From positions 179,670 to 243,669 of IMG/VR virus record IMGVR_UViG_3300005289_000052: a DNA stretch of 64,000 bases; one strand, given 5' to 3'. Position numbers and translations under genes: made by a program. Below are positions 11,165 through 18,610 of the stretch, piece after piece. A model generated the notes under the pieces. It did not search any database. It worked only from the letters and a program-made list of their open reading frames with translations, and had not been told where the DNA came from. Numbering within the stretch: position 1 is the first letter of the stretch; each line of letters opens with the position of its first letter.

Positions 11165-11570
11165 TATCTACTCCCTCTTGAATCTTTTGTCGCAAAACAT
11201 CAGTAGGGTTCTCTGGTCGGCAGCGTGCCAGTTGATAGATCACCACATCGCCACGTGGTGTCAACTCAAAGTCCCAACTCCAATCAGCCACCTCCACACG
11301 CACAAGTCCCCATACGTAACGCTTGATAGCGTCAATGGCTTCATCGAGCATGTCTTCGGCTTGGTTGTCAGGTATCTTATCGTCGTATGACTTAAGGTAC
11401 TTAACCAAGCTGTGGTAGCTAGACATCACGTTCCCATAGAGAACGTTTTCAACCAACCCGAAGTAGAACCCGGACAGGTCAACAAACTTGGCTTGAGCGC
11501 CAATGTAACTTGCTAGGCGCCCCTCCAGTTGTCTAATGACAGGAGCCCCAGGGATGACAAATGAGGCCAC
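11097..11570 (-). CDS. Hypothetical protein, tandem run
   Basis: ORF track; likely GTG start at 11570 with GGAG RBS. Confidence 0.65.
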   Translation of the reverse strand: MASFVIPGAPVIRQLEGRLASYIGAQAKFVDLSGFYFGLVENVLYGNVMSSYHSLVKYLKSYDDKIPDNQAEDMLDEAIDAIKRYVWGLVRVEVADWSWDFELTPRGDVVIYQLARCRPENPTDVLRQKIQEGVDNGDWYPSELRRQLGITGDLTDL

Positions 11571-12051
11571 GAGTGTTACTCCAATCCCAAATCCGGTAAT
11601 CACCTTTACGCTCCAGAATCAAGTTATTGCCGAACTCCTTGATTTCATAGACATCCCAACTCGGTCTATCCCCAAAGAGTTTGCCGAAGATCTGATTGAT
11701 TAAGCCTTCAATCGGATCACCAACAGCATCTACGAACATAGCTTTAAATTGGGGATGTAGATATTCATCGTTTGGACACAGTCGAGCCATTGCTCCCGAA
11801 CGGTGGCCACGCTCGATGAATTCCTTAGGGAACGGTCCGAATGCACGGGTGAGTTTCTTTTCTTCTGCTTCGATGGGGTACCAGCTCAACCAAGAGCGCA
11901 GTTGCTGGAGGACCATTGCTTTGGCCAACAACATACACTTAGATCGAGTTGCAGCAGGGATCAGGTGTTGACACCCAACCTCCAAGTAGAAGTTATCAAG
12001 CCTGTACTTCAACTGTAGTGCAATAGTTTCTACCGGATACAAGAAGTTCAT
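11533..12051 (-). CDS. Hypothetical protein, tandem run
   Basis: ORF track, GAGG RBS. Confidence 0.7.
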   Translation of the reverse strand: MNFLYPVETIALQLKYRLDNFYLEVGCQHLIPAATRSKCMLLAKAMVLQQLRSWLSWYPIEAEEKKLTRAFGPFPKEFIERGHRSGAMARLCPNDEYLHPQFKAMFVDAVGDPIEGLINQIFGKLFGDRPSWDVYEIKEFGNNLILERKGDYRIWDWSNTRGLICHPWGSCH

Positions 12052-12059
12052 GCCAGCCT

Positions 12060-12419
12060 CTAACTGCTAATCAAATACAATCCCGTCGGTCGGATCTCCA
12101 CACGGAGTTCTGACTCTGGGACATGGCTATACCCGCAGGCAGTCACCAACCGGAAGAGCCTATTACGCAGTACATTGTTTCTGTCAATACGCTGCATCAC
12201 TTTCAATACGGCGAATGAGGGACGTGGTTTCTCTATGCTGAGCAAAGTACTCAACTCGATACACTCAGCAACCCATGACAGTTCAACGGCTTCCACTGCA
12301 TTGACGTAGGAGAGTTCTTCGAAATCCCCATTGTACCAAGGTTCACAAATTTCCCGGTGGATCTCCATGCGGACCAAAGGGTGTAGGTTACGGTAATCCG
12401 CAACCAGTTCAAGTGCCAT
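12060..12419 (-). CDS. Hypothetical protein, first gene after early promoter
   Basis: ORF track, AGGTG RBS. Confidence 0.7.
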   Translation of the reverse strand: MALELVADYRNLHPLVRMEIHREICEPWYNGDFEELSYVNAVEAVELSWVAECIELSTLLSIEKPRPSFAVLKVMQRIDRNNVLRNRLFRLVTACGYSHVPESELRVEIRPTGLYLISS

Positions 12420-12450
12420 AACTTTTCACCTTTCTGAAGGTTAGTCACTT

Positions 12451-12470
12451 GGATAATATAGGTCTAAAAC
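12451..12470 (-). promoter_or_regulatory. Early promoter
   Basis: GTTTTAGACCTATATTATCC. Confidence 0.65.
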
Positions 12471-12557
12471 TAATTGGGATGGCGTCTATGACGTCTTCTC
12501 TATAGGATCAGGGGTATGTGTCAATTTAAACGGTATGTCGCTCACAGCGGCTAATAG

Positions 12558-13210
12558 ACGGCATAAGAAGGGTGAACCCCCACAGCACACCCCTCGGACA
12601 AGGAATGACTGTGGGGTAACCCACCAACAACACCAGTTCGCTTAGGAGGACGAACTTGAAGCAACACCCGGATCGCTTCCCTAAACATACTCAGTCAAGG
12701 TCGGCCGCCAGAGAGCCGAGTATGTTTAAGGCTGCGGTCAAGACGCTAAATCCCACCGGGAAAGAGTGAGAGGGTCAAGACAACAACTTGAGGGATTCGC
12801 CGTCCCTCCAGACCTTTCAGTTCCTTAGCATTTGCGAGACGCTAAGCAACTTCCTTACTGCCCCTGTGTTGGAAGTCGAGGTACACAGGAGTCCCCGGCA
12901 CTACTGGCCGGAGAATTACGCACAGGCGACAAGCCGCGCTCGCAGCGGCCGCCTTATCGCGTCAAGCTGCTTTCACTCTTTGAGCCGTCTACACTTACAC
13001 GGTGACTCGGTTCTTAGCCAAGGCCATGATTTGGGGTTCTGTCCTGAAAGTAGTAACAGTTCCTACGACGCCCGGTTTTACCCGGAGAAAGCACAACCTA
13101 GGGTGAGTGGGAAAGCCGAAACCTTCCAGACAGTTAATAGTCCGACGGGGAGGGACCCTGTCCATGGTGGGGTAGATTAGCTCCCACGCAAGTCTTACGA
13201 TACACTCACT
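12558..13210 (-). ncRNA. Candidate large structured ncRNA block at the 3' end of the tRNA operon
   Basis: No credible ORF; many hairpins; long-range pairs 12761-12769/12973-12981 and 13104-13110/13204-13210; ends in stem plus TTATGCCGTC. Confidence 0.5.
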
Positions 13211-13212
13211 TG

Positions 13213-13298
13213 TGGTACCCGAAGCCGGACTCGAACCGGCACGGCCTAAGGCCAACGCATTTTAAGTGCGGTGCGTCTACCGATTCCGCCATTCGGGT
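13213..13298 (-). tRNA. tRNA-Leu(UAA)
   Basis: Cloverleaf, CT-TAA-AA loop, long variable arm, GGTTCGAGTCC, encoded CCA. Confidence 0.95.
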
Positions 13299-13397
13299 GA
13301 ATGGGTGCCTTCTTTCTATTTGTCTCTGAAAGGGTTCTTTGTTTCCGGCGCAGATCCTAACTCATTGACGAAAGAAGACATTGAAACGTTGAGAGAA

Positions 13398-13472
13398 CGA
13401 CGCTACAGGATTCGAACCTGCGGGAAATACCGGTCGCAATGCGACTGCCTTCGACCACTCAGCCAAGCGCCG
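13398..13472 (-). ncRNA. tRNA-like RNA with collapsed 3-nt anticodon loop and no CCA
   Basis: Acceptor CGGCGCT/AGCGTCG, D arm GCTGAGTGGTCGAAGGC, GTCGC-ATT-GCGAC, T arm GCAGG-TTCGAAT-CCTGT. Confidence 0.7.
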
Positions 13473-13545
13473 AACTCTCAAACTAGATTTCCCCACTAGG
13501 TTAAAGCCTAGCTGCCAAGGTCGGGATCGACCTAGTGGAGAAAGA

Positions 13546-13633
13546 TGGCGGAAGGACAGGGACTCGAACCCTGGGACCTTTTACAGTCGGCGGTTTTCAA
13601 GACCGCTGCAATACGCCGCTATGCGACCCTTCC
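13546..13633 (-). tRNA. tRNA-Ser(UGA)
   Basis: GCGGT-CTTGAAA-ACCGC, long variable arm, GCCA end. Confidence 0.95.
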
Positions 13634-13887
13634 GAAAATCAAGCCAGGGCTATTCCCTGGAGTCACTCCCACGCCTAGGCGACGCGACCGATTAGAGGAA
13701 ACCTGAGAGGACCGATCGGCACGGTTTGTCTCTCACCCTTTTGGGTATGGATGTCTAGACGTTGAGTTGTGTGAGCAACTCCCCATTCGTCCACAGGGCA
13801 GGGCCACCAGCAGGGCAGGCGCTTGGTGTTGGGCGGACCATCCCGTTTATACTCGGGTATCTAAGCGCCTGAGGCGCGATCCATAAA

Positions 13888-13975
13888 TGGCAGTAGATAA
13901 GAGATTCGAACTCTTGTGGCTGTTACACCAACACGCTTTCCAGGCGTGCCCCTTAAGCCTCTCGGGCAATCTACT
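13888..13975 (-). tRNA. tRNA-Ser(GGA)
   Basis: CACGC-CTGGAAA-GCGTG, long variable arm, GCCA end. Confidence 0.95.
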
Positions 13976-14142
13976 GTAAAAGATGTAGCAAATCAATCAT
14001 TACCCGGTGTGCGACGTGTTGTATTTAGACAGCTCGGTGTCCCTGCCAGGATTTCGGGTTGTACCTGGAATACTCTCCCGAAGGACAGTGTTATACCTTT
14101 CGGCGTTTTTAACTATAGGGACTGTTCTATCGCACCACTGAT

Positions 14143-14217
14143 TGAAACCTCTTGATGGAATCGAACCATCGTCTTCCCGCTTGGGCGGCAGGCTATCTAC
14201 CATTGAAATAAAGAGGG
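14143..14217 (-). tRNA. Atypical or pseudo tRNA-Gly(CCC)
   Basis: Cloverleaf with CCTGC-CGCCCAA-GCGGG (G33 instead of U33), good T arm, 1:72 mismatch, ends TTCA not CCA. Confidence 0.6.
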
Positions 14218-14218
14218 T

Positions 14219-14405
14219 GAGTTGTTTCCCTTTGGTCTATGTTCTCTGAGGTCGGACTCGAACCGACAATGTCTAACGCTCTAACCATTACGCTAGCACG
14301 CTTCGACGCACCCACAGACAGGCAGCCCTACTAAGGGGCCAGGGTCATCTTGCCCGAAGGCTCAACCCAGGGTATACCAATTCCCCCACTCGAGGGAAAC
14401 AACTC
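14219..14405 (-). ncRNA. Expanded tRNA-Leu(UAG)-like RNA with extra arms, enclosed by a 13-bp stem
   Basis: Leu-type D arm GGGGAATTGGTATACCC, GGCCC-CTTAGTA-GGGCT arm, T arm GTCGG-TTCGAGT-CCGAC, flanking GAGTTGTTTCCCT/AGGGAAACAACTC. Confidence 0.6.
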
Positions 14406-14585
14406 TGATCATTCTTAAGCAGTAGATTTCACCGTACCGTCGGCTGTAATGTTACTTTCTACTTGCCTAGGCTTTCGCCTTGATTCCCTGCATCCAGACT
14501 CGCGTTACTGGATACTGCTTAAGAACAACAATGACAAACAAGATTCCTTTGTAACGCGTATTGTATTGCCTAATTTTTCAAGGCG

Positions 14586-14665
14586 TGGCCAGGGGAGCCT
14601 TCGGACCCTACTCCCACATGGAACCCCTGTTGGTGGGGCTGCTTTAGAGCTTTTAGCGACTGGCC
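14586..14665 (-). pseudogene. Degenerate tRNA-Leu(CAA)-like element
   Basis: GGCCAG/CTGGCC-A acceptor, GCCCC-ACCAACA-GGGGT arm, variable hairpin; D and T loops non-canonical. Confidence 0.4.
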
Positions 14666-14694
14666 GTTTCACGTTACCGCTGTTTATCAATGTA

Positions 14695-14770
14695 TGGCAC
14701 GCATCCAAGGACTCGAACCTTGAACCTCTGGGTTTGGAGCCCAGCGCTCTGCCAGTTGAGCTAGACACGC
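14695..14770 (-). tRNA. tRNA-Trp(CCA)
   Basis: CTGGG-CTCCAAA-CCCAG, canonical D and T loops, GCCA end. Confidence 0.95.
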
Positions 14771-14879
14771 GTTGTTGCGGTCGCCCACACCACCGGTTAC
14801 TGATACCCTGAAGCGGGTTTCGGGTCATGAGTCCCCGTGCGTCAGTTAACTGCGATTTTACCAATGATGCAGGCGAACA

Positions 14880-14955
14880 TGGTAGCACCAAGTGGGTTCG
14901 AACCACCGACCTCGCCCTTATCAGGGGCGCGCTCTACCAACTGAGCTATAGCGCT
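14880..14955 (-). tRNA. tRNA-Ile(GAU)
   Basis: CGCCC-CTGATAA-GGGCG, ACCA end. Confidence 0.95.
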
Positions 14956-14962
14956 ATGAAAC

Positions 14963-15193
14963 TTAACACAGGATCGCGATACCCTCATCACAGTGACAAG
15001 GACAAGTACAAACCTCTTCGTCCTTACCATCGGGCTTTACAAGCACCCAATTGCGATGTGGTCGCGGTGTAGCGATGTCACGTTCTTCAATGCGAACGAT
15101 CTCACCAAACAGCTTTCGAAGGCGTTCAATATCGGGCGGACTATCGTAACTGGTCCTGAAAGTTGCTTGGGGGTATTTGCAACATCCAAACAT
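14963..15193 (-). CDS. Small Cys-rich protein (76 aa)
   Basis: Likely ATG at 15193 (MFGCCKY...CTCPCHC...C); follows the 60-aa gene. Confidence 0.55.
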   Translation of the reverse strand: MFGCCKYPQATFRTSYDSPPDIERLRKLFGEIVRIEERDIATPRPHRNWVLVKPDGKDEEVCTCPCHCDEGIAILC

Positions 15194-15209
15194 GACGTCA
15201 CCCTTGTGC

Positions 15210-15392
15210 TTAGGAAGCCTTGAGGACTTCGCCGATCTTGATCTCGCGATCGTCGTACACAACCCGGTGGCTGCTTTGACCATCTTGCAAGACGAACTCT
15301 TCATGAATCTCGCCAGTGACGCGATTCACGATACTCACTTTAACTTCCTTATCGGAAGAACAGTGGGCGGCAACAGTAACGGTGGTGGTCAT
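15210..15392 (-). CDS. Small beta-rich hypothetical protein (60 aa)
   Basis: GAGGAG RBS; MTTTVTVAAHC... Confidence 0.75.
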   Translation of the reverse strand: MTTTVTVAAHCSSDKEVKVSIVNRVTGEIHEEFVLQDGQSSHRVVYDDREIKIGEVLKAS

Positions 15393-15401
15393 GGTGACTC
15401 C

Positions 15402-15776
15402 TCAGGCTGAACGACGGTTGTGGTTGACGCGCTGGATTTCCAGCTCGACATACAATTCCATCGGGTACTGAGAAGGCAACTCAACCGAGACACGCGCATT
15501 GGCAGTCTCAGGATTCACGAACACCGCAAACGGTGCATTGGCGAAAGAGCCCAACACACCCTGCATGTTCACACCACGCGCAGCCTCGTTAACAATCGGG
15601 CTGTTGATGTTGCAAGCGATGTCAACACCATCGACGGTGGTAACACGCACAGCTTTCACCGATTCGATCGAGTCGGTTGCGTCGAAGTCTTCGATCTGGG
15701 TAGCCAACAGGCCAAACAGATTGACTTCACTAACCTTCAGCGGCAAGCGCAGATGGTCGACAGGATACTTGTACAT
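15402..15776 (-). CDS. Hypothetical protein; stand-alone paralog of the C-terminal domain of the DUF2829 protein
   Basis: Aligns by eye with the C-terminal ~120 residues of 15786..16418; both end NRRSx. Confidence 0.8.
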   Translation of the reverse strand: MYKYPVDHLRLPLKVSEVNLFGLLATQIEDFDATDSIESVKAVRVTTVDGVDIACNINSPIVNEAARGVNMQGVLGSFANAPFAVFVNPETANARVSVELPSQYPMELYVELEIQRVNHNRRSA

Positions 15777-15785
15777 GACAGCCCC

Positions 15786-16418
15786 TTAATCCGAGCGACG
15801 GTTGCGTTGGCCGTATTCGATACGAAGAACGGCGAACAGTTCGACACCGGCAGTCGGTGCGGCGTGAGCACAGGCTTCCCACATCTGGGTATCTACCTGA
15901 ATCGACAGAGCACGACCATTCGGCATCCGGTCGTTGAACGACTTCATGCGAGTCTCGCTCTTGTGTGCTACTGCTTCAACGACGTTGCTCTGGACGACCA
16001 GGGCATCAACCGTTTCAATGCGCACCACTTGGACTGAGAAGATCGCATCCAGCTTTTCCAACTTGGCGCCAGCGGCTTCACCCAACTCGTACAAGTTGGA
16101 GCGCACATCACCATCAAGCGGAATACGGACCTCGAACTTGTTGACGTAATCCTCAGCATCAAGGACTACCCAGTCGTCAGCCAGGATGTCAGACTGAGAG
16201 GCAACCCACGGCACAAAATCACCGTTGTGTGCTTTCAAGCCCAACCAAGGTCGCAGGTTCGGTGTAGGGTCCTTACGAACGTTGAGCCCAACGGTTCGGG
16301 CACCCACGTCATAGTGACTAGCGCCAACTAAGACGACCCACATGCCTTTACCGTTCCAACCCTCGCGTGTGGCGCGAGAGCCGTGCTTCAATCCCGTAAG
16401 GGCTTGACCGAACTCCAT
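15786..16418 (-). CDS. DUF2829 (Tad2-like anti-defence sponge) domain fused to an unknown C-terminal domain
   Basis: MEFGQAL..LK.G....R.GWNGKGMWV ... FVPWVASQSDILADDW signature; AGGAG RBS. Confidence 0.85.
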   Translation of the reverse strand: MEFGQALTGLKHGSRATREGWNGKGMWVVLVGASHYDVGARTVGLNVRKDPTPNLRPWLGLKAHNGDFVPWVASQSDILADDWVVLDAEDYVNKFEVRIPLDGDVRSNLYELGEAAGAKLEKLDAIFSVQVVRIETVDALVVQSNVVEAVAHKSETRMKSFNDRMPNGRALSIQVDTQMWEACAHAAPTAGVELFAVLRIEYGQRNRRSD

Positions 16419-16439
16419 GTGAAGCTCCTGTTGTGAAAT

Positions 16440-16513
16440 TGGGGTGAAGCCGGGAATCGAACCCTGGTCCTCTGCGCCACAAGCAGATGTTCTACCACTG
16501 AACTAGCAACACC
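16440..16513 (-). tRNA. tRNA-His(GUG)
   Basis: TCTGC-TTGTGGC-GCAGA, G-1:C73, CCA end. Confidence 0.92.
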
Positions 16514-16521
16514 ATTGAAAT

Positions 16522-16609
16522 TGGAGGTGGGTAAGAGATTCGAACTCTTGGAGCTGTTACACCCTGATCCTTAGCAAGGACCCGCAATCGGCCTCTCTGC
16601 CAACCCACC
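16522..16609 (-). tRNA. tRNA-Ser(GCU)
   Basis: GGTCC-TTGCTAA-GGATC, long variable arm, CCA end. Confidence 0.93.
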
Positions 16610-16629
16610 TTAAAACTGTACAACGAAAA

Positions 16630-16704
16630 TGGCTCCGAGACCTGGATTCGAACCAGGGACCAAACGGTTAACAGCCGTCTACTCTACCGCTGAGCTATCC
16701 CGGA
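16630..16704 (-). tRNA. tRNA-Asn(GUU)
   Basis: GACGG-CTGTTAA-CCGTT, GCCA end. Confidence 0.95.
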
Positions 16705-16811
16705 AAGGAAATTGAATGGGAAATGTGCCTCCGTCCCAAAGCGGAGGCGTAGGATATGGAGTGAACCATAACTGACGCCCGCAGCCACCCCGAAGGGCAA
16801 TCCACCACAAA

Positions 16812-16898
16812 TCAACGTAGGTTGCTTTATACCTGACTAAGCGACCAGACCATGGAGGAACTGACTAGGGGTATGATCCCTAGTTCTCCCTACGTTGA
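16812..16898 (-). ncRNA. Circularly permuted tRNA-like (YrlA-like topology) RNA candidate
   Basis: 10-bp terminal stem; T-like arm precedes an acceptor-like hairpin (with internal CCA) and a D-like arm. Confidence 0.5.
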
Positions 16899-16901
16899 AT
16901 A

Positions 16902-16977
16902 TGGCGCCTCCGAAGGGACTTGAACCCTCGGCCCCCGGCGTGACAGGCCGGTGCTCTAACCACTGAGCTACGGAAGC
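16902..16977 (-). tRNA. tRNA-Asp(GUC)
   Basis: CCGGC-CTGTCAC-GCCGG, GCCA end. Confidence 0.95.
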
Positions 16978-17171
16978 GTAAACGTCCTGAGGAAAATGGA
17001 CTCTGCGATCACCCAGACTGTGCCTGTAGGTGCATCACTTGTTGGCTCAAGGTTCGTGTAGACTACCATGGGCCAGGAACAATCTTGAGCGTGTCGACCG
17101 ACGTGGAGCACTAGAAAGCGCAACCCACTAGGAGAGAGGTACTCTCGATCCTTCTCAACAATCTCAATCAT
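16968..17171 (-). CDS. DUF1653-like small protein; stop codon lies inside tRNA-Asp
   Basis: Y..PSG..F.VLHVGRH......MVVY......G.VWV.....F pattern; GAGG RBS. Confidence 0.65.
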   Translation of the reverse strand: MIEIVEKDREYLSPSGLRFLVLHVGRHAQDCSWPMVVYTNLEPTSDAPTGTVWVIAESIFLRTFTLP

Positions 17172-17608
17172 GTTCATTCCTCGAATATGGCTCCGGCTTG
17201 CTTCCCGCCGCAAAGACGGTTCACTAACTCATGTGTAGCCAGACGACCCGCCGGAGAGGTCTTTAACTAGATGCACCAGTATCCCTGAGGTTCCGAAGAA
17301 GGCAGGTACACGATGCAACTCCACTGGACTACGAGTTTGGGTGATCCTCTCGGCAGATTCCCGCCGAGTTAATGCTGTGGGCCGCGGGGAGGGTTCGCTC
17401 AAAAGGCAACCAAAGCGGCTCTACTGCAAAGGATCGTAATCAACTTCCCTCGCACTGAGTGGATTGCTCAGCACTTATTTTCCTTGATCCCCAGGGACGG
17501 TAGGGACATCGACTCGGTGCCTGGCTACCCTTCCACAGGGCTGCTGGTAACGTTGTCTCACAAGGTAAAACCACCGTATCGCCAGCAAGGGTCGTTGCGG
17601 TGTTAAAA

Positions 17609-17684
17609 TGGCGGAGGGTAGTGGGATCGAACCACTGCATGATGGAATCAAAGTCCATTGCCTTACCAACTTGGCTAACCCTCT
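17609..17684 (-). tRNA. tRNA-Gln(UUG)
   Basis: ATGGA-CTTTGAT-TCCAT, GCCA end, 1:72 mismatch. Confidence 0.92.
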
Positions 17685-17834
17685 CTGAAATTTTTACCTC
17701 GCCGCTAAGCACGACACCTAGCGACTTATTATTACCGTGACCCCGGATCAAGGGTTGTCGATCAGGTTCGTTACGCCTGGCCCTACACGGTAAAACCCAT
17801 TGCAAAATCCCTAGGGCTATCACAATGTTAAAAG

Positions 17835-17919
17835 TGGTGGATGATCTAGGACTCGAACCTAGGGTGTATCAATGTGCCGATTTACAGTCGGTTGTCTTCG
17901 CCGCTCGACGCAATCATCC
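17835..17919 (-). tRNA. tRNA-Tyr(GUA)
   Basis: CCGA-CTGTAAA-TCGG, long variable arm, ACCA end. Confidence 0.93.
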
Positions 17920-18196
17920 AGTAAAGCTGACAGTGTTGCGCATCGAAGCGCTGCTGGTTCCCGGACCGCACCAGCTTTCCATTAACGACGGCTGACGCGT
18001 TGTCAGCTATGGCCCTCGTTAATGACTCCCCAGGAGTACACCGCCTCAAAATGGTGCCCCGTTTCCCTATTACGGGAATCTGTTCGACTGACTCCGTGAG
18101 AGGAGAGTCTAGGTTACACGGACTCAATGTCTCCACCCCGAAAGGTTCATGACACGAACTCCCATGGCCTCAGACCAGGACGTGAAACTAAGAATG

Positions 18197-18327
18197 TGGC
18201 CCCGCTACCTGGATTCGAACCAGGGACCTCCCGACGGGCACGCGTGTTCAAACGTTCTCACCGCAGCGCGGCTATTAACGTAACCGCATGTCAGACGAGT
18301 GCTCTATACCAACTGAGCTATAGCCGG
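18197..18327 (-). ncRNA. tRNA-like RNA (GAC/Val-like) with a 53-nt insertion in the anticodon loop
   Basis: Canonical TAGCTCAGTTGGTATAGAGC D arm, CCTGG-TTCGAAT-CCAGG T arm, GCCA end; insert at 18236-18288. Confidence 0.75.
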
Positions 18328-18330
18328 GAA

Positions 18331-18567
18331 TGAGAGAGACCGCTACCCCGATCTACGGACTGTGATACTCCAAGGGACTCAGGCGAAAGGGAACCGAAAG
18401 CCTGAGAACTGCGGTATGCAAGCGCAGTTTGTCTATTACCCCGGAGACGGGTCACGTGCAGTATGTTGGGTGTGTGGGGTCCGTCAAGTCTCCACGTTCC
18501 CCCTTGGTGGCGAAACCAAGAGCGTGCTGGAACTTTCCCTTCAACCTGCTTCGCGTCATTTCTCTCA
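18331..18567 (-). ncRNA. Candidate structured leader RNA of the tRNA operon
   Basis: Ends pair (TGAGAGA/TCTCTCA); several internal hairpins; no credible ORF. Confidence 0.4.
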
Positions 18568-18595
18568 TGATATCATTGAGCTATGTATTTTTTTA
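18567..18595 (-). promoter_or_regulatory. Putative middle-type promoter driving the tRNA/ncRNA operon
   Basis: AAAAAAATACAT resembles phiKZ middle motif AAanntTAC, about 20 nt upstream of the RNA block and just past a terminator. Confidence 0.4.
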
Positions 18596-18610
18596 CTGTA
18601 CTAGTCAGGG

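What the first reader, a model, noticed from the sequence alone, without database searches (positions are those of the whole stretch)
12558..13210. ~650-nt multi-domain non-coding block after tRNA-Leu
Seen: a domain closed by GTGAGTG/CACTCAC (13204-13210 with 13104-13110); a ~220-nt domain closed by AAAGAGTGA/TCACTCTTT containing at least five hairpins; an 11-bp TAAACATACTC/GAGTATGTTTA helix; CTTGAC recurring four times, GTCTTGACC twice. Inference: one or more large ncRNAs, in a tRNA-adjacent location like GOLLD.
Basis: partly seen in the sequence, partly recalled or inferred. Interest (0 to 1): 0.6.

Follow-up and report, generated by a model that had tools for sequence, protein, structure and literature searches.

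The report
New large phage RNA behind tRNAs
The block is a real, previously uncatalogued, roughly 650-base folded non-coding RNA that sits at the tail end of the tRNA gene cluster of a phiKZ-like giant phage, in the same genomic setting as the mysterious giant phage RNAs GOLLD and ROOL but unrelated to them in sequence and fold.

Summary
The finding holds, with corrections. Window 12555-13212, minus strand, encodes a structured non-coding RNA of about 655 nt. It starts on the base after the CCA of tRNA-Leu(UAA), the last gene of a 13-14-tRNA array in a 243.7-kb phiKZ-like jumbo phage.

Eleven distinct homologues (650-850 nt) turned up, all in one narrow clade of uncultured phages (DNA polymerase at least 80% identical) and always downstream of the tRNA array. 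Covariation is strong:
- 5' 251-nt core: 94.6% of cells paired against 36-46% in slid controls, and 25 pairs with compensatory changes against 1-5.
- Full length, seven sequences: 173 pairs, 53 compensatory.

The sense strand is the window's minus strand, judged from fold z-score, alifold energy and G-U pair content. No conserved ORF exists, and no Rfam 15 family matches even at E up to 10.

RNA-type libraries hold near-identical contigs inside the RNA and none over the neighbouring coding genes. That is weak evidence of expression.

The AAAGAGTGA/TCACTCTTT closing helix and the CTTGAC repeats are not conserved.

The function is unknown. My best guess is a stable trans-acting RNA released from the tRNA-operon trailer, possibly self-associating through an invariant apical GGCC.

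The parts
13213..13298 (-). tRNA-Leu(UAA), last tRNA of the array. Its 3' CCA ends at 13213 and the RNA starts at 13212.
   Evidence: ARAGORN and Rfam tRNA at 56.6 bits. The same direct abutment is seen in L108, L109, L110, L112, L113, L114, L115, L116 and G002.
12555..13212 (-). The whole structured non-coding RNA, about 655 nt. The 5' end is set by the tRNA 3' end. The 3' end is approximate (12555-12575): a terminal hairpin, a U-rich stretch, then the conserved UUAUGCC.
   Evidence: Homologues and alignments; covariation; fold z = -3.97 on minus against -0.87 on plus; no Rfam match; RNA-library contigs at 12559-12718, 12671-12790, 12700-12930 and 12827-13081.
13103..13209 (-). Domain 1. Helix P1 (GUGAGUG/CACUCAC) closes three hairpins: 13166-13189; 13128-13163 with an inner 13139-13157; and 13110-13127, which carries a UUCG loop.
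   Evidence: helices 1-4 (100, 100, 80 and 100% paired; 10 pairs with compensatory change).
12963..13100 (-). Domain 2. A long-range helix (13087-13100 with 12963-12974) encloses hairpin 13071-13086, stem 13067-13070 with 12986-12989, the nearly invariant hairpin 13035-13063, hairpin 13000-13026 and hairpin 12975-12985. This is the most sequence-conserved part of the RNA.
   Evidence: helices 5-12. The CUG/CAG to UGG/CCA switch in four sequences is seen. Invariant blocks are listed.
12790..12962 (-). A row of five hairpins: 12918-12962, 12892-12915, 12861-12891, 12824-12846 and 12790-12808. The last two loops carry invariant CUCGCA and GCGAA.
   Evidence: 3, 4, 2, 4 and 4 covarying pairs respectively. 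Invariant columns.
12749..12776 (-).
   Evidence: 8 bp, 96% paired, 3 covarying pairs.
12662..12748 (-). Its apical loop carries the invariant GGCC.
   Evidence: 21 + 5 bp, 8 covarying pairs..
12703..12706 (-). GGCC, invariant in all 11 homologues, at the tip of the long helix. Flanking bases vary but keep palindromes of 4-12 nt. It is a candidate symmetric kissing or dimerisation site.
   Evidence: The analogy to OLE L9.3 comes from bioRxiv 10.1101/2024.12.08.627333. Inference only.
12577..12614 (-). The terminal hairpin, followed by a U-rich stretch and the conserved UUAUGCC (12560-12576). It is terminator-like.
   Evidence: 5 covarying pairs. In the L032 group the equivalent is a GC-rich hairpin directly followed by UUUAUGCC.
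12420..12554 (-). A block almost invariant in both subgroups (TTGACA or TTCACA ... TATAGAG ... CCTATATTATCC ... GAAAGGTG ATG). It is probably the promoter and 5' UTR of the next gene, not part of the RNA.
   Evidence: The motif does not recur elsewhere in the genome, so the promoter reading is an inference.
12060..12419 (-). A 119-aa ORF of unknown function immediately downstream. Among about 120 fetched loci it occurs only in the RNA-bearing phages.
   Evidence: No Pfam or PHROG match.

Best explanation
Window 12555-13212, minus strand, encodes a new family of large (650-850 nt), highly structured non-coding RNA. The family is specific to one clade of uncultured phiKZ-like jumbo phages.

Shown: the RNA lies on the tRNA strand at the 3' end of the tRNA array, usually starting on the base after the CCA of tRNA-Leu(UAA). 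It has a conserved 250-nt 5' core of two multi-helix junction domains, followed by a more variable tail of 8-12 hairpins. It ends in a terminator-like hairpin.

Inferred mechanism. The RNA is transcribed as the trailer of the tRNA operon. Host tRNA 3' processing frees its 5' end, three bases before the closing helix P1. It then accumulates as a stable folded RNA that acts in trans, as GOLLD and ROOL are thought to. It may act as an RNA-only or RNA-protein particle and may self-associate through the invariant apical GGCC. Its target is most likely in the tRNA, translation or host-takeover sphere.

My sub-probabilities:
- A real structured RNA on the minus strand: about 0.9.
- Made as a tRNA-operon trailer and released by tRNA processing: about 0.6.
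- Homo-oligomeric scaffold or sequestering particle: about 0.2-0.25.
For: Genome context. The window is part of a 243,669-bp IMG/VR phage record with terminal repeats. It has split RNAP beta subunits, a phiKZ-type DNA polymerase and a tail sheath. Thirteen to fourteen tRNAs lie on the minus strand at 13213-18327.

Homologues. There are 11 distinct sequences, from IMG/VR and metagenome contigs. There is one copy per genome.

Covariation.
- 5' core: 94.6% of cells paired against 36-46% when partners are slid; 25 pairs and 95 cells with compensatory change against 1-5 pairs; 0 of 500 shuffles reach the observed value.
- Full length, 7 sequences: 173 pairs, 96.6% paired, 53 compensatory against 2-8.
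- The 4-sequence subgroup: 235 pairs, 44 compensatory.

Strand. MFE z = -3.97 on minus against -0.87 on plus. Alifold energy is -185.8 against -147.5, and G-U cells number 172 against 82.

Non-coding. There is no conserved ORF.

Junction. The RNA model starts on the base after tRNA-Leu in 9 contigs.

Expression hint. A groundwater metatranscriptome and two wastewater cDNA libraries hold contigs at least 99% identical inside 12559-13081 and in the tRNA-array spacers. They hold none over the coding stretch 11500-12440.

Oligomer hint. GGCC is invariant at the helix apex, with palindromic flanks. A GGCC tetranucleotide forms a symmetric intermolecular kissing loop in OLE.
Against: - There is no direct transcript-end or abundance data. 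Only assembled contigs at low depth were available, and two of the three 'RNA' runs may be DNA.
- In five homologues an endonuclease ORF sits between the last tRNA and the RNA. Release by tRNA processing therefore cannot be universal.
- The family is narrow: 11 sequences in one clade. Many pairs never vary, and related sequences inflate the shuffle statistics.
- Function is inferred purely from context and analogy.
- In several members the apical GGCC can also be read as the loop of a small local hairpin, which needs no second molecule.
Confidence: 0.6

Rival explanations
1. It is the RNA subunit of a ribonucleoprotein formed with a phage protein. The obvious candidate is the 119-aa protein encoded immediately downstream, which is found only in the RNA-bearing phages. 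On this reading the conserved junction loops are protein-binding sites rather than RNA-RNA contacts.
For: The 119-aa gene co-occurs strictly with the RNA among about 120 related loci, while the next genes have homologues in phages that lack the RNA. The RNA has invariant single-stranded blocks in junctions.
Against: The protein has no recognisable domain. It evolves fast (33-57% identity) while the RNA core is nearly invariant. In L032 and L034 another gene is inserted between them. Co-occurrence within one clade may be plain shared ancestry. No binding test was run.
Confidence: 0.15
2. It is a cis-acting element of the tRNA operon or of the downstream gene. Possibilities are a giant 3' trailer that blocks 3' exonucleases or terminates and insulates transcription, or a leader that controls the 119-aa gene.
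For: It sits at the operon's 3' end and finishes in a terminator-like hairpin. It is followed by a highly conserved promoter- or UTR-like block.
Against: About 650-850 nt, with two conserved multi-helix junction domains and invariant loops, is far more than termination or exonuclease blocking needs. The RNA is kept when an ORF separates it from the tRNAs and when an extra gene separates it from the 119-aa gene. The terminator-like hairpin lies between the RNA and the downstream gene.
Confidence: 0.12
3. It is a ribozyme. It might cut itself free from the tRNA precursor, or it might be an RNase P-like or other RNA-processing catalyst for the phage tRNAs.
For: It has a conserved, compact 5' core with invariant junction nucleotides. 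It is physically linked to tRNAs. A short run, GGACAGAACCCC, recalls the P4 3' strand of bacterial RNase P RNA; that resemblance is from my own recall, not a test.
Against: No RNase P, group I or II intron, or small self-cleaving ribozyme family matches, even at E up to 10, in seven members. The GGACAG run pairs locally, with covariation, in a hairpin rather than in a long-range P4 (helix 8). Host RNase P and 3' processing enzymes suffice for phage tRNAs (established knowledge).
Confidence: 0.07
4. It is a very divergent GOLLD or ROOL RNA that the Rfam models miss.
For: It has the same setting (phage, tRNA island, sometimes directly behind a tRNA) and the same size range.
Against: Neither RF01998 nor RF03087 gives a match at E up to 10 in seven members. 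The conservation pattern is reversed: here the 5' 250 nt are conserved and the 3' part varies, whereas GOLLD has a universally conserved 3' region.
Confidence: 0.04
5. It is not an RNA gene at all. It could be a decayed coding region or decayed tRNA genes, or a DNA-level element such as an origin or a packaging site.
For: The window sequence has a 130-aa plus-strand ORF and an 86-aa minus-strand ORF.
Against: The ORFs are not conserved. Indels are not in threes. Compensatory changes keep the helices, and 172 G-U cells on the sense strand would be A-C mismatches on the other strand. No tRNA-model hit falls inside the block.
Confidence: 0.02

Closest known systems
GOLLD RNA (Rfam RF01998)
   Same: A large (often over 800 nt), ornate, phage-encoded RNA of unknown function. 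It is often found in or beside tRNA islands and sometimes directly downstream of a tRNA. The size range overlaps the 650-850 nt seen here.
   Different: No covariance-model match. GOLLD's conserved part is the 3' region; here it is the 5' 250 nt. This RNA is found in phiKZ-like virulent jumbo phages, not in Lactobacillales or mycobacterial prophages or marine phages. Multimerisation was not tested here.
ROOL RNA (Rfam RF03087)
   Same: A phage and prophage RNA of about 580 nt that often lies near tRNA islands. It has no known protein partner and is very abundant.
   Different: No model match. The secondary structure is different. Abundance and cage formation are unknown here.
OLE RNA symmetric kissing loop (L9.3)
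   Same: A hairpin-tip palindromic tetranucleotide, GGCC, mediates a symmetric intermolecular kissing loop in OLE dimers. Here GGCC is invariant at the tip of the longest helix, with palindromic flanks.
   Different: OLE is a bacterial (Bacillota) RNA with a different fold and different partners. The match is to one motif only, and here it is an untested inference.
3' external transcribed spacer RNAs of tRNA operons (for example E. coli 3'ETS-leuZ) and tRNA-punctuated RNAs such as MALAT1/mascRNA (own knowledge)
   Same: A functional RNA whose end is made by tRNA processing. In 3'ETS-leuZ the RNA is the trailer right behind a tRNA-Leu at the end of a tRNA operon.
   Different: 3'ETS-leuZ is about 50 nt and acts by base-pairing as an sRNA sponge. 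The RNA here is more than ten times longer and has a compact conserved core. Processing has not been shown.

Membership tests
GOLLD (RF01998) | Match to the family covariance model | tested here: not met
   No hit at E up to 10 in the window or in six other members.
GOLLD (RF01998) | [quoted passage not shown] | tested here: not met
   Here the 5' 250 nt are conserved and the 3' part diverges, with 200 nt of extra length in one subgroup.
GOLLD / ROOL | Encoded in phages or prophages, near tRNA islands | tested here: met
   A jumbo phage record. The RNA abuts tRNA-Leu at the end of a 13-14-tRNA array.
GOLLD / ROOL | Homo-multimeric RNA-only nanocage | not testable with these tools
   This needs in-vitro transcription plus native gel or cryo-EM. 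The only hint is the invariant apical GGCC.
ROOL (RF03087) | Match to the family covariance model | tested here: not met
RNase P RNA (RF00010, RF00011, RF00373, RF00009) | Match to a family model, and a long-range P4 helix with the conserved CR-I and CR-V | tested here: not met
   No hit at E up to 10. The ACAGAA-like run is in a local covarying hairpin (helix 8).
tmRNA | A tRNA-like domain plus a tag-peptide reading frame | tested here: not met
   ARAGORN finds none. No Rfam hit.
Group I / group II introns and small self-cleaving ribozymes | Match to a family model | tested here: not met
   tRNA-Leu is intact and uninterrupted.
Structured non-coding RNA (generic) | Helices kept by compensatory changes, strand-specific G-U pairs, and no conserved ORF | tested here: met
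Structured non-coding RNA (generic) | A discrete transcript with defined ends | tested here: inconclusive
   Only contigs from RNA-type libraries were available. They lie inside the RNA and not over the neighbouring genes, but they show neither ends nor strand.

The most novel reading that the evidence does not exclude
This is a third, independent class of giant phage RNA that, like GOLLD and ROOL, self-assembles into an RNA-only multimer. Here it is nucleated by a symmetric GGCC kissing loop, and it is made by a nucleus-forming jumbo phage as a by-product of tRNA-operon processing. It would act on host or phage tRNAs, on ribosomes or on a defence factor. If true, tRNA-island-linked RNA assemblies would be a general phage strategy rather than two curiosities.
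Probability: 0.2. Interest if true: 0.85.

Novelty: new variant of a known kind. Interest (0 to 1): 0.66.

Why it matters
Bacterial and phage RNAs longer than 500 nt with elaborate conserved folds and unknown function are very few: OLE, GOLLD, ROOL, raiA and a handful more. Two of them share this exact setting, a phage tRNA island.

An unrelated third family in the same setting would strengthen the case that these RNAs are functionally tied to phage tRNAs or translation. This one sits in a different phage lineage, the phiKZ-like jumbo phages. Its 5' end abuts a tRNA 3' end, which suggests how such RNAs could be released.

It also offers a compact 250-nt conserved core for structural work. The limits are a narrow distribution (one uncultured clade), no cultured host-phage pair and no direct transcript data.

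Tried and rejected
- **Rfam.** Gathering thresholds on the whole window, then E up to 10 on 12300-18600 and on six relatives. Only tRNAs and noise came back.
- **GenBank phages by blastn.** Only the tRNA-Leu matches. The nearest cultured relatives (Xanthomonas phages RTH11, LucasX and Xoo-sp14, tail sheath 44-52% identical) lack the RNA when searched with model R1, while positive controls hit.
- **Neighbour protein search.** The 119-aa neighbour found no loci in IMG/VR.
- **Exact-pattern scans.** Conserved 17-25-mers against IMG/VR, metagenomes and 185,579 prokaryote genomes. The scans found only the same clade. The 17-mer also gave 18 chance hits. Bacterial genomes gave nothing.
- **More distant relatives.** Model R1 against 78 loci around the DNA polymerase of more distant relatives, against five whole records at 45-62% polymerase identity, and with filters off on the tRNA-proximal spacer of L037. 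No homologue was found. L037 has a plain terminator behind its last tRNA.
- **Coding reading.** Rejected.
- **RNase P-like reading.** Rejected.
- **CTTGAC as a functional repeat.** Not conserved.
- **Anti-Shine-Dalgarno-like CCUCCU at 12640s.** Not conserved in L115 or in the L032 group.
- **TATATTAT block as a recurring phage promoter.** It does not recur in the genome.
- **Catalogue check.** I looked for this RNA in the IMG/VR structured-RNA catalogue of PMC10690425, but no supplement text is held, so prior listing there cannot be excluded.
- **Not done.** No protein-binding or complex prediction was run.

Full report
**Where the window comes from.** The window is the last 64 kb of a 243,669-bp IMG/VR virus record with direct terminal repeats. 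The record encodes split multisubunit RNA polymerase beta subunits, a phiKZ-type DNA polymerase, a terminase and a tail sheath. The tail sheath is 35-52% identical to those of phiKZ-like jumbo phages. The nearest cultured ones are Xanthomonas phages RTH11, LucasX and Xoo-sp14. The standard genetic code gives dense genes throughout.

**The tRNA array and the block.** On the minus strand, 13213-18327 holds 13 tRNAs by ARAGORN, plus one more found only by Rfam. The flagged block lies directly downstream of the last tRNA, tRNA-Leu(UAA) at 13213-13298, in the direction of transcription.

- The block has no conserved reading frame and no Pfam match.
- Folded as RNA, the minus strand is much more stable than shuffles (z = -3.97). 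The plus strand is not (z = -0.87).

**Relatives.** The DNA polymerase gene 4 kb away served as an anchor. A conserved 25-mer pattern was then run against metagenomes. Together they gave 11 distinct homologues. They fall into two subgroups:
- Seven RNAs of 648-664 nt, including the window's.
- Four RNAs of 845-850 nt.

All lie in phage contigs whose DNA polymerase is at least 80% identical to the window's. There is one copy per genome. In every case the RNA is on the tRNA strand, downstream of the tRNA array.

In nine contigs the covariance model starts on the very base after tRNA-Leu(UAA). In G003, L111 and L032-L034, a secreted SNase-like endonuclease ORF is wedged between the last tRNA and the RNA and ends within six bases of it.

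**How far the family reaches.** The next-closest phages (45-62% polymerase identity), 78 further relatives' polymerase neighbourhoods and the three cultured Xanthomonas phages all lack it. No bacterial genome of 185,579 species holds the signature pattern.

**Structure of the 5' core.** With 12 sequences aligned to a model of the first 251 nt:
- 94.6% of pair cells are standard pairs, against 36-46% when partners are slid by 1-3 columns.
- 25 of 72 pairs show compensatory double changes, against 1-5 in the slid controls.
- No shuffle out of 500 reaches the observed values.

**Full-length structure.** Over the full length of the seven-member subgroup, RNAalifold gives 173 pairs in 24 helices. 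They are 96.6% paired, and 53 pairs are compensatory against 2-8 in slid controls. The four-member subgroup gives 235 pairs, 44 of them compensatory.

**Which strand is sense.** The window's minus strand. Alifold energy is -185.8 against -147.5 kcal/mol, and 172 G-U cells on that strand compare with 82 on the other.

**Architecture, in window coordinates.**
- Domain 1, 13103-13209.
- Domain 2, 12963-13100. It is closed by a covarying long-range helix. It holds the near-invariant hairpin 13035-13063 and several invariant junction strands.
- Five hairpins between 12790 and 12962, followed by a local helix at 12749-12776.
- A terminal hairpin at 12577-12614, followed by a U-rich stretch and the conserved UUAUGCC.

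The relatives contradict it: both strands take part in other, covarying helices. Of the four CUUGAC copies, only the one at 12961-12966 is invariant.

**What follows the RNA.** Next comes a 130-nt block that is almost invariant in both subgroups and ends in a ribosome-binding site and an ATG. I read it as the promoter and leader of the next gene. Its TATATTAT-type motif does not recur elsewhere in the genome, so that reading is an inference. The next gene (119 aa, no known domain) is found only in the RNA-bearing phages.

**Expression.** Only assembled contigs of public runs could be laid.
- A groundwater metatranscriptome holds a 231-nt contig with one mismatch at 12700-12930.
- Two wastewater cDNA libraries hold contigs at 12559-12718, 12671-12790 and 12827-13081.
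- All three also cover tRNAs and tRNA spacers.
- None covers the coding stretch 11500-12440.

This fits a stable RNA, with a 3' end near 12559. It is weak evidence: depth is low, there is no strand or end information, and two of the libraries may be DNA.

**Comparison with known families.** No Rfam 15 family matches the RNA in seven members, even at E up to 10. That excludes recognisable GOLLD, ROOL, OLE, RNase P, tmRNA, group I and II introns and the small ribozymes.

The setting, though, is that of GOLLD and ROOL. Both are large ornate phage RNAs of unknown function that sit near tRNA islands, GOLLD sometimes right behind a tRNA. Both were recently shown to form RNA-only nanocages (bioRxiv 10.1101/2024.12.08.627333).

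The conservation pattern is the reverse of GOLLD's: here the 5' part is conserved, whereas GOLLD's conserved part is the 3' region.

One detail points to self-association. A GGCC at the tip of the long helix (12703-12706) is invariant in all 11 sequences. Its flanks change but keep palindromes of 4-12 nt. The cited paper reports the same tetranucleotide in the symmetric kissing loop that joins OLE dimers. A local mini-hairpin reading of the same bases cannot be excluded.

From my own knowledge, the closest mechanistic precedent for making the RNA is the 3' external transcribed spacer of the E. coli glyW-cysT-leuZ operon. There, a functional RNA is released from behind a tRNA-Leu.

**Verdict.** This is a genuine, new family of large structured RNA. 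I file it as a new variant of the kind 'tRNA-island-associated giant phage RNAs', not as a member of any described family. How it is made is inferred, and its function is open.

The literature searches found no description of such an RNA in phiKZ-like phages. An IMG/VR-wide catalogue of candidate structured RNAs exists (PMC10690425) and could list fragments of it, but its tables were not available here.

Noticed in passing
window 13976-14143 (-): The spacer between tRNA-Ser(GGA) and tRNA-Gly holds a second conserved structured element of about 150 nt, seen in 9 relatives. It has 39 predicted pairs, 98% paired, and 10 compensatory pairs against 0-1 in slid controls. It has no Rfam match. A metatranscriptome contig covers 14004-14181.
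   Followed up: partly
window 18200-18327 (-): A tRNA called by Rfam (44.9 bits) but missed by ARAGORN. It carries a 55-nt insertion in the anticodon loop, so it may be an intron-containing tRNA.
   Followed up: partly
window 15786-16418 (-): A 210-aa ORF inside the tRNA array has a Tad2-like (Thoeris anti-defence 2, PF11195) domain, E = 8e-23. The array may therefore double as an anti-defence island.
   Followed up: no
L004 4577-5125; L033 4409-4891: In five relatives, an SNase-like endonuclease ORF with a signal-peptide-like start (phrog_452) is inserted exactly between the last tRNA and the RNA.
   Followed up: partly
window 12060-12419 (-): The 119-aa ORF downstream of the RNA occurs only in the RNA-bearing phages. 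It evolves fast (33-57% identity) and has no Pfam or PHROG match.
   Followed up: partly
window 13634-13887 (-) and other tRNA spacers: Several other spacers in the array are conserved at 75-90% among relatives. The 13634-13887 spacer shows 14 compensatory pairs in 4 sequences, with little difference between the two strands.
   Followed up: partly
whole stretch 12440-13300: Near-identical DNA is held in runs from food, fermentation, plant, rhizosphere, compost and wastewater metagenomes, and in a few single-organism runs (coded names). These may point to the host. One such run (X8) holds a 95%-identical relative on a 10-kb contig.
   Followed up: no
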